From Klebsormidium nitens (taxonomy: Eukaryota; Plantae; Klebsormidiophyceae), in NCBI GenBank assembly GCA_000708835.1, contig DF237472.1, forward strand, positions 1 through 63,923: DNA of 63,923 bases. Reading direction: 5' to 3'. Position numbers and translations under genes: made by a program. Shown here in pieces: positions 2,144 through 62,200 of the stretch. The first letter of the stretch is position 1. Each line of letters opens with the position of its first letter. Under the pieces are notes generated by a model. That model did not search any database and was not told the DNA's origin. It saw only the letters and a list, made by a program, of their open reading frames with translations.

Positions 2144-5100
2144 CTACAGTCCTGACGCTTCTGTGATTTTGACGGCGTTGATCAACGGCGGGCCGCCGGG
2201 CTTTTGGCACATGCAGTCCGGGATTGGGTTGCCGTATATTGCGACTGGGTACGCTTCTCCGCTTCGGTTGCGGGGTCCGCCGGACATCTCCCATTTCCGG
2301 ACCTCCGCTTGAAACTCGTCCCAGGACTTGTCTTCTATACAGGGCATGAGCCAATTGGGCAGCATTTGTGTCTTCTTGAAGCCCTTCCACGTGCGCTCCC
2401 CAGCAATCTGCCACCGCATCTGCAGAGAAGCAAGCATCCTTGAACGCTGTTGTAAAGTACAAATCTGGAAGCGTGATAATTACTGAGCGCGGATTGGGTC
2501 GTGGGCACTGCTTTCCGATATCATTGCCAAGCGAATCTTCAGAAGCCGACAATAATGAGTGCTTAGAGGAATTGAAGCACCTCAAGCCTTTTATCCGCTT
2601 CCAATGGGCTTTACTGATGGACAAAGAGAATCTTGCAGACATCAGTAGGTTGCAATCCTGACCAGCAACTTTTCGACCATTGGCACAAGCTTGTCCAAAA
2701 TCTCCTCCAATGCAGACTATTCGTCGACAACCGATCGCGTCCATCGGCTTTCGTCGAATAATGACTTTCATGACTCGTCGACAGCCAAAAGAAAATCTGG
2801 CGGACTTTACCTGCAACGTCGGCAGAAGATAGCAGTGTCCCAGCACACAGAGTGACTTTTTAGAGAAGTTTTCGCATCTTTTTTTCCCTACAACCAACGA
2901 GCTCTCATGAGATAACTATGGAGAGGATTCCCAAAGTCAGCCTCCACTCAAAATAAAGCGCTTACCTGTCCATGGAACGTCAGCGCCGCCACGTCAGCAT
3001 GCGTCAGCACGTACAAATCGACCGCTGCCATGAAGTTGGACTTGCCCTTCAACTCGGCGAGCTCCGCCGGGGAGAGCAGGCTGCGCTTGGTTTGCAACTG
3101 AGGGAACATCGCTTTGAAGTTCGCCATGTGGTACTCCGCCCGGTAGATCTTTCCCGAGGCCAGGTAGAGGGGCGTGTCGGGGCCGAACCTGGAAGAAAAG
3201 GTGCCACGTCTCAGCTTTGATTGTGGCGGGCAAATCGTGATTAGCTTCAACAGTTTGCATCCATGTTGATGAAGATTGCCTTGAAATATAGTGGGGTACT
3301 CTGCCCGGTACATCTACCCCCCGAGGCCAGGTAGAGAAGCGTGCCGAAGCAGAACCTGGGGAAAGTGTTTGCCAGGTGTCAGCTCTAGATGCGACATCAG
3401 ATGGTCAGAATTTTGGTGATGACTATTCAAGCGTTACTCAGCCGTCTTCGAATTCGCCATGTGTAACCTTGCCCAGTACACTTTCCCGAGGCCAGGTGGA
3501 GAGGCGTGTCGAGACCAAATCTTATGCAGAGACCATGCCAAGTGTAAGCTCAAAAGCTCGACTTACGTTCTCACTGAGAAAGAAGGAGTCACCGAGACAT
3601 CACCCCAGTCCTTGCAAGCAACTCAGCTTTGTCCAACACTCGGAGCGTCAACGTGAACACATCTCTGGCTGCACGGGTTTCTGCGACAGCGTCTCGCGAC
3701 TCCGACGGATACTGCCCGTCCATTCCAGAGGGTTCAGAAACAAGCCGAAAGAAGCAACGAGAACACCCTATGAGGACGGAGAAGCGAACTAGGAACAGAG
3801 ACTCACCCCAAACCTCGTAACCACTTGGCGACTTCTCGCGGCTCCGACGGGCACTGCCCGTCCTTCCGCAGCTGCTCAGCCGTACGGTCCGCCTCGGGCC
3901 ACTTGCGCTCCGTGCGCATCTGGGCGAAGTATGCGGCTTCGGCCTCGCCGCCGCCAAAATCGCAACTAGAGTGGGCCAGCATGTCCTGCAGATTTGGTGT
4001 GTAAAAATCCTTCAGTTTTTGAGGGAAATGAGTGATCGACGAGCGAAAAGCGCTCCGTGCGCATCTGGGCGAAGTATGCGGCTTCGGCCTCGCCGCCGCC
4101 AAAGTCACAACTAGAGTGGGCCAGCATGTCCTGCAAGTTTGGAATGTGCAATTCGTTCAGATCTGGGGCGTAAATAGATTCCCAATGTGCTCCGTATGCA
4201 TCTGGGCGGAGCATGCGGCCTCAATTTCGCCACATCGCCAAAGTCGCAACTAGAGGGGGCCAGCATGTCCTGCACGTGCCAATTTCGAGTTCTTTGGGAA
4301 TCTTGAAATAACCAGGTATTCATACTGAACCGGTTGCATTATGTGCGCGCCTGGGCGTTTACGCGGCCTCCGCTTCGCCAAAGTCGCAACTAGGGTGGGC
4401 CAACCTATCCTGCGCGTTTTGGGGGCTTCAGAAATTGTAACACACGCGTTTCAAGTGCTTATAACATCCTGCCCGGAACATTTGACCAGAAATCCTCACC
4501 TCTTCCAACCGCAGGTGCATCCCCACGAAACGGCCGCCCCCCATCGCTCGAATCTTTTCGACCCGCTTCTTGTCGTCGTAGCCGATACATATTAGTCTCA
4601 TCATCCGACAACATAGAAACAATCAAAACCAAGAAGTGAAATGCAAAGGAGTTACCTCTTCAAACCGCAGGTGCATCCCAACGAAACGCCCACCCCCCAT
4701 CCCCCGCATCTTTTCCACCAGCTTCTGGCCGAACCCGACGACCCGCTCCGAGAAGCGCAATGCATCGTACTTGGCGCGGCACCGCAGCTTCTCGTATTGC
4801 AAGGGCAGGTAGATCGCGAGCGGGTTGTAGAAGCCGAGACGGAACCACGCGACGCGGTGCTCTCTCAGGGCGGGAAGTTCTTCTCGGTAGTAGTCCTGAG
4901 AAAAAAATCACATTCAGATTCGTTTCTTTAGAGGTATGCAGAGGTTTATTTGTTACCTTCTTTTTCCCCACTCCCTCGCCTTTTCACATTTTCTGGACAG
5001 ATTGCGAGCGGGTTGTAAAAGCCGAGCCGGAACCACGCAACGCGGTGCTCTCTCAGGGCGGGTAGTTCTTCCCGGTAGTAATCCTGAGGAAAGAACGGCA

Positions 5101-59200: not shown

Positions 59201-62200
59201 TCAGATTTAACCCGCTTCTCCAGCCTGCTTCTGTGCTTGAGCAAACGGGTTTGCCGTAGCTCGTACTTCAACTGACGCCGAGTCTCTATCAAATCGTAGC
59301 GGGCCTGCAACACTGAGCTTGACTAATTCTTCAAACCTGGTCTGATGGTTTGGTGGACTTCGATCGGGCTGGTTGTATCTGTGGCACTCAAGTCCGACGT
59401 CAAGCATGTAAGCATATAGGCGTTTGTGCTTCCGTGCGGCTGCCTGACCTTGTCGGTCTTTTTGTGGACCTTACAGAACAAAATTGAACTCGACCCTCCG
59501 CTTTCGCAAGCAAGAATACTTCTGAGGACGGGATTGCCAAGTCTTATCTCAATCAGATGATTGGGCCTCGAGTACACATCACCTCATTGAGCACATGAGC
59601 CCTGCAAGTGCTTAACTCAACACCCTGGATCTAAGATTGTATGATTCAGTAGTGCACAAAGGATCGACTCCGAGTAGGTAATCTGCAATCGGACAGTCAG
59701 GAAGTCGGATTCTGCATTCGAAAAGTCCAGACTCAGAACGGGTAGAATGATTCAGAAAGGCCATTGAAAACAGAGAGCTGCTAGAATCAACCTCAAAAAC
59801 CCCTTCTAAGTGAGAACATAGGGGATCCAGCATCCGTTCGGAGTCATCTTAAATAAGTGACCTTCGACAGCGTATTGTTGGAGAACAAAACGAAACAGAA
59901 TTATTCAGGATTATAACGTTGGACTACAATACTCAGAATCCTGAAGCAAGCAGCTCACCGTATAGATCTGCTTTGCATCCACCGTCTTGGTGCCCTTTGC
60001 CAGCCCAGAGATGTCCCAGAGACAGATCTGGGCATCGTCCGAACCGGACAGCAAATGGCCCTCCCGGAACGGACTCCAGGATAGGCCGTAGCCCTGCAGA
60101 CACGATCAGCGAATACTTAGTCGACTGTGACGAACGCAAGGCACTCTTAGCACACCGAACCGGACTGGGGTGATTTCGTTCCACCGCTCATAACGTCAAG
60201 ATTAGTCATTACTATATCCATCTCTCCGCTTGAAGTTGGCAAGCGTCCTGCACTTTTGCTTGCAGTTACATAGTCCCCCTCCCTGACTCAGCTTTGTTTG
60301 AAGCCTCTCAACCAAGGTCCAGACAGCATATTGGATGCCCCTCAATCAGCCACTTAACTAACTGTCCATTGAAAGTACTTTCCCACCCTAAGCGCTTCCC
60401 GACCTAAGCGCCTAGGAATTGACAAAGTGCATCTCCCTTTTCTGCCTTCTTTTTGAGCAGGCTCGGTGGTCTTTCTCTTGGTGGTTTCACTAGTGTTTCG
60501 AACCCAGGTTTCCTTCTTGAAACCGGTTTGACTAGCCGACCTCTGTTTCATGCCCCATCAACGAAGGTACCTGCCGCAGGTGTCCTTCTTAGGGGGCCAT
60601 AATTGGTGTTCATTGGGGCTTAAGGTTGAGAGAATGATCCAATTGGCCCCAATCTCAGATAACCTGCCTCTTGAAAGGGACAGGTGCCCATTATTCTTTA
60701 GACCCGTTGCACTAAGGTCGACTGGTCCGGTCAACGCACCTCTGTTTTATGCCCCCGTAACCTCAGGTCCGGACTGCACGTTCCCTCCTGGGGGGGCTTG
60801 GACGGGTGCTTGCTGTAGTCAAAGACGTAGACCTCTGCGCTGACGGTCTTTGTTGCAATTAGGAAGGGGTTTTGCGGCATGTACCGCGCTCGGTTTACCT
60901 CGCCGTCGTGGTTGATGGACTGCAGTATGTTAACCTGCGCGGAAAGCGGAAGAGGGAACTGATCGTTCAAACGTGTTTGAAGCAGCTTCATATAGCATAG
61001 GGGCACGAGCATGCTTGCTTCTGGCGATCGTAGGCAAGCAATTGGCGTGCACACAAGTTGTGTCTTCTTTGAGAAATTCTGAACCTGACAGTTTGTGCCC
61101 GTAAGTACCCAATGCCAGAATGCATGAGTGACACAATTGCCACCAAAATGCCACCGATTGAAGTCTGGCTGATGCTCATGCGGGTCCTCAAGACAGAATG
61201 TAGGTTCGTTGCTGCAAGTCGCCTTCAGATTTGACTTGCTTGTGGAAGATCAAACACAAATGTTACTGGAGCATTCTGATGAGAGCTTCATTTTCCAAGC
61301 AAACCCTGAAAATTCCACTCAAACACAGGCAGTCTTCTCGATCGACGGCCTTCTAAGACGGGCAACTACCAACCACTCAAGATTGGGGCCACAAAGTAGG
61401 CTTTTTTCCAAGCACTCAAGATTGGGCCTCGAATCGGCTTTCTTCCGATCAAAAGAAAAGATCAAGTTGTTGAAGTGCTGAGTTGTTGCTGCCGGCAGAG
61501 ATGATGGCACCCTGGTGGTAAATCTGTTTCCAATTAAACTCCAGCACTTTCCAGGTTGAGCTGAATATTACATCAGCTCAACCACAATTCTTGGTAATGG
61601 TGAGTCTAGAATATAATGAGAAGACATACTCAGAGCACAAAGACTTTGGCCAGCAATGCAGATTAGTGCTTTGCTGATCAAACTCCATTTACGCTGAAAG
61701 ACCCAATCGGACTTTCTCATGCTCGCCGAGGGCCTAGCACCACCATCTGTCAGTCTTTTGGAAGAGCAGCATGAAGCGAAAACCTTTCAGTCAGTGATCA
61801 ACGTTCCTAAAACGTGATGCTCACACTCAACGAGAAGAAAGCACGAACTCAATCCTAGGCTGACCTTCCCCATCACCCCAGCGTAACCCCCAAACTCGCC
61901 CCGCTCGTCGTCGTACTGCCGCGCATCCGTCTCCGTGTCCTCCAACGGCAGCTGCACCTCCGCAATCATCAGGTAATTCTGCTCATTGTCTGACGTGTGC
62001 GTCCCCAAGATCAGCTTTTGAACAGAGTAATCTTTCCCCGCCGGTTCGGACCTGTCCGGCAGCCATTGCACTGTAAGACTCGGCCACTCCAGGGCGTGCG
62101 TGACTACCAGGTCGTAGAGAAACGGCGTGTTCTTCTTCCAGATCTTGTACTCTTCATTCAAAAGGCGCTCCTCGCCCTCGTCTGGGTAATCGTCCTCCTC

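What the first reader, a model, noticed from the sequence alone, without database searches (positions are those of the whole stretch)
2966..60600. Pervasive 'exon echo' system: decaying tandem copies of splice site + exon end fill the introns of every large gene
Seen: about 30 exon boundaries in 6 unrelated genes on both strands carry 1-6 direct tandem copies. Upstream introns hold copies of [intron tail + AG + first ~25-90 nt of exon]; downstream introns hold copies of [last ~60-110 nt of exon + GT + intron head]. None of the echoes I traced is a complete exon. Identity ranges from 2 mismatches in 80 nt to barely alignable, so they are of many ages and not assembly artefacts. Each echo contains both intron and exon sequence, so it was not copied from spliced mRNA. 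Inference: a recurrent local duplication process builds much of the intron mass. Duplications straddling a splice junction leave the ORF intact, so they survive, and genes grow introns out of their own exon ends. I do not know of a description of this as a genome-wide system, but I cannot search the literature.
Basis: partly seen in the sequence, partly recalled or inferred. Interest (0 to 1): 0.9.

Follow-up and report, generated by a model that had tools for sequence, protein, structure and literature searches.

The report
Splice-junction copy arrays padding introns
In this green alga about a third of exon borders are followed, inside the neighbouring intron, by rows of 1-7 worn copies of that same border. 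These unused copies make up about 40% of the intron DNA here and show an unusually active way for introns to grow.

Summary
Thirty of 92 modelled exon boundaries in six genes carry 1-7 head-to-tail copies (71 in all) of [part intron + splice site + 25-108 nt of exon]. The median spacing is 152 nt. None of 828 control comparisons reached the lowest positive score. The arrays fill 40% of 33 kb of intron.

RNA contigs from three studies splice past the copies at every junction tested, so the copies are not exons. MSH1 orthologues in three related genomes have the same exons but different copy numbers at different boundaries.

- Exon-derived parts of copies are kept far better than intron-derived parts of the same units. 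One unit is a clear mosaic. This points to gene conversion from the real exon.
- Copies sit almost only at exons of 140 nt or more (28/52 against 2/40 boundaries).
- The 7-copy intron is retained in RNA.

The best reading is relics of local duplication, maintained by unequal exchange and conversion, which lengthen introns. The scan had already found and followed up the same phenomenon on other windows of this genome, which earlier notes name as Klebsormidium nitens. I found no published description.

The parts
3129..3550 (-). Gene A (O-FucT family): 2 acceptor-side copies for exon 2966-3188
   Evidence: spacing 165, 169; one search score 43
3573..3866 (-). Gene A: 2 donor-side copies for exon 3807-3985
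   Evidence: one search score 26
3926..4422 (-). Gene A: 3 acceptor-side copies for exon 3807-3985; the nearest has 2 differences in 81 exon nt
   Evidence: (D12)
4498..4715 (-). Gene A: 1 donor-side copy for exon 4656-4895
4836..5617 (-). Gene A: 4 acceptor-side copies for exon 4656-4895, spacing 156-188
   Evidence: (D10, D11, D15)
14869..15354 (+). Gene B (O-FucT paralogue): acceptor-side copies for exon 15281-15476. The upstream intron is not fully modelled, so this array is not in the 92-boundary count
   Evidence: (D7)
16090..16601 (+). Gene B: 3 acceptor-side copies for exon 16542-16937
   Evidence: (D18, D19)
16878..17092 (+). Gene B: 1 donor-side copy for exon 16542-16937. My gene finder mistook it for an exon (17009-17079)
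18222..18485 (+). Gene B: 2 acceptor-side copies for exon 18426-18564, short 87-nt unit (62 nt intron + 25 nt exon)
   Evidence: (D13)
24385..25020 (+). Gene D (membrane protein): 4 acceptor-side copies for exon 24961-25151. In the nearest copy the exon part is 98% identical and the intron part about 56%
   Evidence: (A2)
25941..26318 (+). Gene D: 3 acceptor-side copies for exon 26259-26416
26357..26780 (+). Gene D: 2 donor-side copies for exon 26259-26416
   Evidence: (D17)
28097..28501 (+). Gene D: 3 acceptor-side copies for exon 28442-28615
   Evidence: (D14)
28556..28783 (+). Gene D: 1 donor-side copy for exon 28442-28615
33625..34224 (-). MSH1: 3 donor-side copies for exon 34165-34401. 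RNA joins 34165 directly to 33148 and skips them
   Evidence: (loose end)
34342..34905 (-). MSH1: 3 acceptor-side copies for exon 34165-34401, inside the RNA-confirmed intron 34402-35380
35050..35440 (-). MSH1: 2 donor-side copies for the P-loop exon 35381-35598
   Evidence: (D20)
35539..36602 (-). MSH1: 7 acceptor-side copies for the P-loop exon, with multi-unit block structure. They lie in intron 35599-37132, which is retained in RNA contigs at about 0.3-0.7 of exon depth. The second copy is a mosaic
   Evidence: (D1, D2, D5)
38629..38926 (-). MSH1: 2 donor-side copies for exon 38867-39024, inside an RNA-confirmed intron
38965..39192 (-). MSH1: 1 acceptor-side copy for exon 38867-39024 (the orthologue in L003 has 6)
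40103..40516 (-). MSH1: 1 donor-side copy for exon 40457-40651
40592..41107 (-). MSH1: 3 acceptor-side copies for exon 40457-40651, spacing 148-152
   Evidence: (D6)
41239..41663 (-). MSH1: 2 donor-side copies for exon 41604-41848
   Evidence: (D16)
44110..44400 (-). MSH1: 1 donor-side copy for exon 44341-44508
47288..47779 (-). MSH1: 3 acceptor-side copies for the 84-nt exon 47264-47347. One is a decayed whole-exon copy with stop codons
52920..53398 (+). Ribosomal protein L1 gene: 2 acceptor-side copies for exon 53339-53509
53451..54165 (+). L1 gene: 3 donor-side copies for exon 53339-53509. A core of about 53 nt (exon tail + GTGAGC) is about 95% identical in all copies while the flanks are 40-68%
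   Evidence: D3; A1
54579..54836 (+). L1 gene: 1 acceptor-side copy for exon 54777-55145
58292..58996 (-). MSI1/RBBP4 gene: 4 donor-side copies for exon 58937-59089, spacing 156-161
59030..59253 (-). MSI1/RBBP4 gene: 1 weak acceptor-side copy for exon 58937-59089
   Evidence: score 21.5
60538..60799 (-). MSI1/RBBP4 gene: 1 donor-side copy for exon 60740-60934

Best explanation
The arrays are non-coding relics of local head-to-tail DNA duplications. The units are mostly 140-170 nt and each spans one splice junction.

1. After a duplication, the copy still joined to the rest of the exon goes on serving as the real junction. That is the first donor or the last acceptor in the row. The other copies lie in the intron as unused look-alike splice sites.
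2. Once two copies exist, the array behaves like any tandem array. It grows and shrinks by unequal exchange, including multi-unit blocks.
3. Patches of exon-derived sequence are now and then overwritten from the real exon by gene conversion.
4. Selection holds the real exon nearly constant and it refreshes its copies. Junction-derived arrays therefore stay recognisable, and recombination-competent, much longer than duplications of pure intron sequence.
5. The net effect is intron lengthening.

Shown here:
- the copies and where they sit;
- that they are not used in RNA at the junctions tested;
- different copy numbers in related genomes;
- the mismatch between the age of the exon part and the age of the intron part of the same units.

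Inferred:
- the molecular route of the first duplication;
- conversion as the cause of that mismatch;
- a selection filter against copies that would be spliced.
For: - **Local direct repeats only.** There are no dispersed repeats.
- **Scale.** 30 of 92 boundaries and 71 copies against 0 of 828 controls. 40% of intron nt lie in arrays.
- **Not used in RNA.** Contigs of three studies join 34401/35381, 35598/37133, 38433/38867, 34165/33148 and 39910/39024, skipping 17 copies. No joint falls inside any array.
- **Not coding.** 33 of 70 copies have indels in the exon part and 10 single-base differences would create stop codons.
- **Multi-unit blocks.** 35672-35855 matches 36117-36300 at 86%, offset 445.
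- **Related genomes.** MSH1 orthologues in L001, L002 and L003 have the same exons but other copy numbers. P-loop acceptor: 7/1/0/0. Acceptor of exon 38867: 1/2/6/1. Intron length against copy number gives Spearman 0.58 and about 122 nt per copy.
- **Exon part kept better than intron part.** Real-to-copy identity is 0.72 against 0.48 in 71 pairs. Observed exon-part differences are 525 against 821 expected from the intron parts under a conservative setting, and 16 of 66 pairs have p<0.01.
- **Mosaic unit.** The exon part of copy e2 is 95% identical to the real exon. Its intron part is 67% identical to the real intron and 81% to the neighbouring copy.
Against: - Random duplication with a harmlessness filter predicts at least as many intron-only duplications. 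Junction 120-mers are positive in 33% of cases against 6% for intron-internal and 4% for intergenic-like 120-mers. Preservation by conversion may explain this, but among the few young duplications the sample is too small to tell.
- The narrow unit size (IQR 138-170), the junction lying near the middle of the unit (exon part 25-108 nt, median about 70) and the near absence at exons under 140 nt do not follow from this model without added assumptions.
- In copies less than 16% diverged, 60% of differences fall on third codon positions. That is somewhat more than neutral decay predicts.
- Gene models outside the 6 kb covered by RNA are my own predictions.
Confidence: 0.65

Rival explanations
1. 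The first duplication is itself aimed at splice junctions. The cause would be a process tied to chromatin or to co-transcriptional splicing. Examples are breaks or template switches at fixed distances on either side of an exon edge, which would give nucleosome-sized units, or repair that uses nascent unspliced RNA.
For: - Junction 120-mers are positive 5-8 times as often as intron-internal or intergenic ones.
- Units have a narrow size, median 152 nt.
- The junction lies near the middle of the unit and the exon part never exceeds 108 nt, even in exons of 200-480 nt.
- There is a strong dependence on exon length >=140 nt (Fisher p 3e-7).
- The same junctions carry arrays in several species.
Against: - Intron-only tandem duplications of similar size do exist: 34693-34836 with period 68, intron 32120-32668, intron 57438-58057 and intron 46446-47263.
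- Preservation bias from the conserved exon and from conversion can inflate the junction excess.
- No chromatin data are available.
- Exon-part length does not track half the exon length as a centred-nucleosome model would predict.
Confidence: 0.2
2. The arrays are kept by selection as splicing regulators. Rows of look-alike splice sites would slow or block removal of their intron and so tune expression through intron retention.
For: - The intron with seven look-alike acceptors (35599-37132) is covered by RNA contigs joined to both flanking exons at about 0.3-0.7 of exon depth in three studies. Four other introns in the same stretch show 0-10%.
- The L1-gene array intron is held at 0.92 of sampled words in at least 10 RNA runs.
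- 49 of 62 copies keep AG or GT.
- Exon-derived parts are conserved beyond neutral expectation.
Against: - Copy number and position differ freely between close relatives.
- Conservation is patchy within one array. Neighbouring copies range from 98% to about 60%, which fits sporadic conversion better than constraint.
- Introns with 5 copies (34402-35380) show no retention.
- The L1 gene is highly expressed, so its pre-mRNA could be assembled anyway.
- Only one intron has depth data.
Confidence: 0.1
3. The copies are alternative or mutually exclusive exons, or alternative splice sites, that diversify the proteins.
For: - Several copies look like in-frame exons to a gene finder: 17009-17079, 34025-34108, 38634-38687, 40876-40911 and 53604-53673.
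- The L1-gene copies c2 and c3 differ from the exon only at synonymous sites in a 42-nt core.
Against: - RNA contigs skip 34025-34108 and 38634-38687 and show no joint in any array.
- With one dead exception, no copy contains a whole exon.
- Half the copies carry indels, and single-base differences in 10 places would create stop codons.
- Inclusion would duplicate conserved peptide segments of L1, MutS and RBBP4.
Confidence: 0.03
4. The pattern is an assembly artefact or a chance similarity.
For: None found.
Against: - Copies differ from one another by 2-40%.
- 0 of 828 controls reach the positive range.
- Independent RNA libraries reproduce the largest array exactly.
- Related genomes from other samples show the same kind of arrays.
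Confidence: 0.01

Closest known systems
Human F7 intron 7 minisatellite whose first 37-bp element spans the exon 7/intron 7 boundary (Borensztajn et al. 2006, PMC1557585)
   Same: It is a head-to-tail repeat whose first unit is the real exon-intron junction. The real donor is therefore followed by a row of intact look-alike donors that stay silent, and the most upstream site is chosen.
   Different: F7 is a single locus with short, near-identical units on the donor side only. Here the units are about 150 nt and of many ages. They lie on donor and acceptor sides alike, at about a third of boundaries, and make up 40% of intron DNA.
Internal gene-segment duplication (Gao & Lynch 2009, PNAS 106:20818; from my own knowledge and as cited in PMC4974935; the paper itself is not held)
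   Same: These are tandem duplications inside genes that include pieces of exons and introns. They are frequent in eukaryotes, and their fate depends on which splice signals are copied.
   Different: As far as I recall, that work counts one-off duplicates per gene in model genomes. It does not describe multi-copy arrays anchored on splice junctions as a main component of intron DNA, nor their exchange of sequence with the exon.
[quoted passage not shown] 2011, PMC3265369; potato RdRp case, PMC4974935)
   Same: A local tandem duplication supplies ready-made splice signals, and the protein is left unchanged.
   Different: Those events create a new intron inside an exon. Here the introns already exist, because their positions are shared with three related genomes. 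The duplications only lengthen them.
Decoy (non-productive) exons that promote intron retention in animals (from my own knowledge, not checked in the library)
   Same: Both have splice-site-bearing exon-like pieces inside an intron that is retained. The 7-copy MSH1 intron is retained.
   Different: No function is shown here. Most arrays sit in introns that are spliced cleanly, and the copies turn over quickly between species.
Tandem arrays under concerted evolution, such as gene/pseudogene conversion pairs
   Same: Array members exchange patches of sequence. One member is under selection and acts as the stable source.
   Different: Here the 'gene' member is only 25-108 nt of an exon end, and the other members are intronic relics.

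Membership tests
Tandem repeat spanning an exon-intron boundary (F7 IVS7 type) | Head-to-tail copies in which the terminal unit is the functional junction | tested here: met
   In all 30 arrays the first spacing from the real junction is 87-311 nt and the copies follow in register.
Tandem repeat spanning an exon-intron boundary (F7 IVS7 type) | Look-alike splice sites intact but silent | tested here: met
   AG or GT is kept in 49 of 62 copies. No joint falls inside arrays in RNA contigs of 3 studies over five junctions. Rare use followed by decay of the RNA is not excluded.
Tandem repeat spanning an exon-intron boundary (F7 IVS7 type) | Short, near-identical units with copy-number polymorphism within the species | tested here: not met
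   Units are about 150 nt and 2-40% diverged. Polymorphism within the species was not testable with these tools.
Internal gene-segment tandem duplication | Adjacent direct duplicate of a gene segment containing exon and intron parts | tested here: met
   Searches show units made of an intron part plus an exon part in register.
Intron gain by tandem duplication (AGGT model) | The duplication creates an intron absent from relatives | tested here: not met
   All MSH1 introns compared are present at the same exon borders in L001, L002 and L003.
Transposon- or introner-derived intron sequence | Copies dispersed to unrelated loci | tested here: not met
   No direct repeat pair lies more than 1 kb apart in 64 kb.
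Mutually exclusive tandem exon arrays | Complete exon copies with both splice sites, in frame, each used in some RNAs | tested here: not met
   Exon parts are partial (25-108 nt of exons of 84-396 nt). The one whole copy is dead. RNA skips the copies.
Decoy exons driving intron retention | Retention of the host intron that depends on the decoy | tested here: inconclusive
   The 7-copy intron is retained, but a 5-copy intron is not. Dependence needs an experiment.

The most novel reading that the evidence does not exclude
The duplications are not random events filtered by selection. They would come from a junction-centred, roughly nucleosome-sized mutational process tied to exon chromatin or co-transcriptional splicing. 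That process would act only where the exon is at least about 140 nt long. The resulting rows of look-alike sites would then measurably slow splicing of their introns. This would be a new mutational mechanism that links splicing signals to intron growth.
Probability: 0.2. Interest if true: 0.85.

Novelty: new variant of a known kind. Interest (0 to 1): 0.68.

Why it matters
- **Intron size evolution.** Intron growth is usually put down to transposons and slow insertion bias. Here a gene-dense region with no transposons owes about 40% of its intron DNA to copies of the genes' own splice junctions. The copies turn over between close relatives.
- **Splice-site choice.** The arrays offer dozens of natural experiments, each a row of intact look-alike acceptors or donors that the cell ignores. 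They also give a tractable case of sequence exchange between an exon and its intronic relics.
- **Open questions made testable.** The exon-length threshold and the fixed unit size can be tested against ideas on exon definition and chromatin.
- **Practical consequence.** The copies mislead gene finders. Mine called six false exons.

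Tried and rejected
- **Pfam on the 20 longest open frames:** no hit. Long frames here are mostly not exons.
- **Coding constraint on the copies:** differences by codon position are 183/186/368, and 46% of the 737 single-base differences would be synonymous. 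Most of this is expected from a frozen exon plus decay of GC-rich third positions. Only the young class shows a mild excess (60% at third positions). I do not read this as coding use.
- **Three-way site test for mosaics:** 25 of 114 triples have p<0.05. A frozen exon alone can produce this asymmetry, so I replaced it with the rate test and the explicit case.
- **Microhomology at unit ends:** looked at by eye in the 87-nt array only, and nothing clear was seen. I did not pursue it because divergence blurs the ends.
- **Centred-nucleosome model (exon part = half the exon length):** does not fit the exon-part lengths.
- **Orthology of single copies between the window and L001:** cannot be settled, because introns are near saturation (orthologous intron tails 58% identical, K4 0.31).
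- **Gao & Lynch 2009:** could not be read.
- **Literature:** six searches found no description of this in Klebsormidium or elsewhere. The genome paper's main text does not mention introns or repeats.

Full report
**What the window is.** It is a eukaryotic, gene-dense stretch with GC about 51%. Self-comparison gives 61 direct repeat pairs, all less than 1 kb apart. There are no dispersed repeats, and the only two inverted pairs lie between paralogous exons. Earlier notes of this scan name the genome as Klebsormidium nitens. I did not verify the name independently. The public runs that hold the sequence are coded.

**Gene models.**
- RNA contigs of three studies were laid on 33800-39799. They define five exons of a minus-strand MutS gene: 34165-34401, 35381-35598, 37133-37538, 38340-38433 and 38867-39024. 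All have GT..AG introns and one open frame.
- Exons have 76% GC at third codon positions against 51% in introns.
- A splice-aware finder trained on this signal reproduced the five exons exactly.
- It gave seven genes:

| Gene | Strand | Span | Identity |
|---|---|---|---|
| A | - | 2144-8737 | O-FucT family |
| B | + | 11528-19227 | O-FucT paralogue of A |
| C | - | 21066-22109 | small Gly/Met-rich gene |
| D | + | 23840-30070 | membrane protein |
| E | - | 31894-48461 | MSH1 |
| F | + | 50439-55145 | ribosomal protein L1 |
| G | - | 56276-62209 | MSI1/RBBP4 |

- Pfam confirms O-FucT, Ribosomal_L1, CAF1C_H4-bd/WD40 and MutS_V on single exons.
- Six low-scoring 'exons' were removed: five are copies of real exon ends, and the sixth (59449-59469) breaks the RBBP4 sequence. 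RNA loose ends confirm the joins 34165 to 33148 and 39910 to 39024, which skip two of them.
- I kept 46 introns between confident exons. They total 33.0 kb, mean 718 nt.

- The first or last 80 nt of an exon aligned to its adjacent intron scores 17.5-76 at 29 of 92 boundaries. The highest of 828 controls is 15.5.
- Junction-centred 120-mers find 30 positive boundaries and 71 copies: 16 acceptor sides with 45 copies and 14 donor sides with 26 copies.
- The median spacing is 152 nt, with IQR 138-170.
- Arrays cover 40% of intron bases.
- Copies hold 25-108 nt of exon plus intron sequence.
- One copy of the 84-nt exon 47264-47347 is a whole-exon copy, now dead with stop codons.
- AG or GT is kept in 49 of 62 copies.
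- 33 of 70 copies have indels in the exon part.

**The copies are not used as exons.** Contigs of three RNA studies splice from real site to real site across 17 copies, with no joint inside an array. Intron 35599-37132, which holds seven look-alike acceptors, is an exception in another sense. Contigs run unspliced from exon to exon at about 0.3-0.7 of exon depth in all three studies, while four other introns in the same stretch show 0-10%. The L1-gene array intron is also almost wholly present in RNA contigs of at least 10 runs. That gene is highly expressed and no depth is available, so this is only a lead.

**Relatives.** One protein search and three look-ups fetched three MSH1 loci:
- L001, a Logan assembly with exons 88% identical in nucleotides and K at four-fold sites of 0.31;
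- L002;
- L003, a JGI metagenome contig with K4 about 0.9.

Exon borders are the same, so the introns are old. Arrays are present in all three but differ. The P-loop acceptor has 7, 1, 0 and 0 copies in the window, L001, L003 and L002. The acceptor of exon 38867-39024 has 1, 2, 6 and 1. The intron downstream of exon 34165-34401 has 3 donor-side copies in the window and 2 acceptor-side copies in L003. Intron length rises with copy number (Spearman 0.58, about 122 nt per copy).

**The copies do not simply decay.**
- Within the same units, the exon-derived 50 nt are 72% identical to the real exon on average. The intron-derived 50 nt are 48% identical to the real intron, with exon above intron in 64 of 71 pairs. 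Between two copies the figures are 58% against 48%.
- A frozen exon can explain a ratio of divergences of about 0.6 at best. I set unalignable intron parts generously to 60% identity. Even so, the exon parts show 525 differences where 821 are expected, and 16 of 66 pairs have p<0.01.
- Examples: copy at 24813, exon part 98% and intron part about 56%; the L1 array, a 53-nt core about 95% identical in all four units with flanks at 40-68%.
- In the P-loop array, the exon part of copy e2 is 95% identical to the real exon. That is closer than the L001 orthologue at 88%. Its intron part is 67% identical to the real one and 81% to neighbour e1, and e1 to e2 is 82% in the exon part.
- This is what a conversion patch from the real exon onto e2 would give. 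Patchy, non-monotonic conservation within arrays fits sporadic conversion better than constraint.
- The same array has a three-unit block duplication, which is the mark of unequal exchange.

**Is the junction bias real?** Junction 120-mers have a local copy in 33% of cases. Intron-internal 120-mers outside arrays do so in 6% (19 of 319, about 8 loci). Intergenic-like ones do so in 4%. Harmlessness alone does not predict this. Slower decay of the exon part and refreshment by conversion make junction arrays visible for longer. Among the few duplications with young intron parts, the junction and intron-only classes are of similar number by my rough count. This window therefore cannot separate preservation from a targeted first event.

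**A new regularity.** Copies occur at 28 of 52 boundaries of exons of 140 nt or more, but at 2 of 40 boundaries of shorter exons (Fisher p 3e-7). The pattern holds within MSH1 and gene D. By my hand count it also holds when only short exons validated by RNA or homology are counted (0 of 20). In the relatives, my hand count from the table gives about 14 of 23 against 2 of 12. The loss of allowed positions in short exons predicts only a 30-40% drop. One possible reason is splice-site competition: a look-alike site 150 nt away defines, with the real partner site, a pseudo-exon of exon length plus 150 nt. That pseudo-exon may be ignored only when it exceeds roughly 300 nt. This is a conjecture.

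**Comparison with what is known.** Single cases exist, and the closest is the human F7 intron 7 minisatellite. Tandem duplication is also an accepted source of new introns and of internal gene duplicates. I found no account of junction-anchored arrays as a major intron component, in Klebsormidium or elsewhere, in six full-text searches. The genome paper's main text does not mention introns or repeats. The same phenomenon has already been reported and followed up by this scan on other windows of this genome. The conversion signature, the exon-length rule and the retained 7-copy intron did not appear in the notes I could retrieve.

**Verdict.** The feature is real and large in scale. It is most likely a non-adaptive product of local duplication, unequal exchange and conversion (0.65). 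A junction-targeted origin (0.2) and a regulatory role (0.1) remain open.

Noticed in passing
window 35599-37132 (-): The MSH1 intron holding seven look-alike acceptors is covered by RNA contigs continuous with both flanking exons, at about 0.3-0.7 of exon depth in three studies. Four other introns in the same 6-kb stretch show 0-10%.
   Followed up: partly
window 53520-54770 (+): The L1-gene intron with three donor-side copies and one acceptor-side copy is held at 0.92 of sampled words in at least 10 RNA runs. It may be retained, or it may be pre-mRNA of a highly expressed gene.
   Followed up: no
window 2144-8737 (-) and 11528-19227 (+): Two O-FucT-family (PF10250) paralogues lie head to head. 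Their intron positions partly differ: gene A has an intron after 'HLRFEE' that gene B lacks.
   Followed up: partly
window 21066-21419 (-): An exon-like frame encodes a Gly/Met-rich low-complexity protein (GGMG repeats). On the + strand it reads as a C-rich imperfect repeat (Tandem Repeats Finder rows 21073-21219). It is not a junction copy.
   Followed up: no
window 34693-34836: An intron-only tandem repeat of period 68 (2.1 copies, 84%) lies inside an MSH1 intron next to the junction array. It shows that duplications without a junction also occur.
   Followed up: partly
window 47575-47680 (-), approximate: A decayed copy of the whole 84-nt MSH1 exon 47264-47347, including a GT after it, carries several stop codons and has no AG before it.
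   Followed up: yes
window 31712-31897 and 48744-48919: Two further local duplications (offsets 118 and 94) lie just outside my MSH1 model. They may mark unmodelled terminal or 5' exon boundaries.
   Followed up: no
L003 15000-20519: Beyond MSH1, the metagenome contig carries further short direct repeats with offsets of 72-194 nt. The neighbouring gene or genes of that relative may therefore have such arrays too.
   Followed up: no
window 17009-17079, 34025-34108, 38634-38687, 40876-40911, 53604-53673: Copies of exon ends score as in-frame exons in a codon-usage gene finder. Annotations of this genome may contain such false exons.
   Followed up: partly
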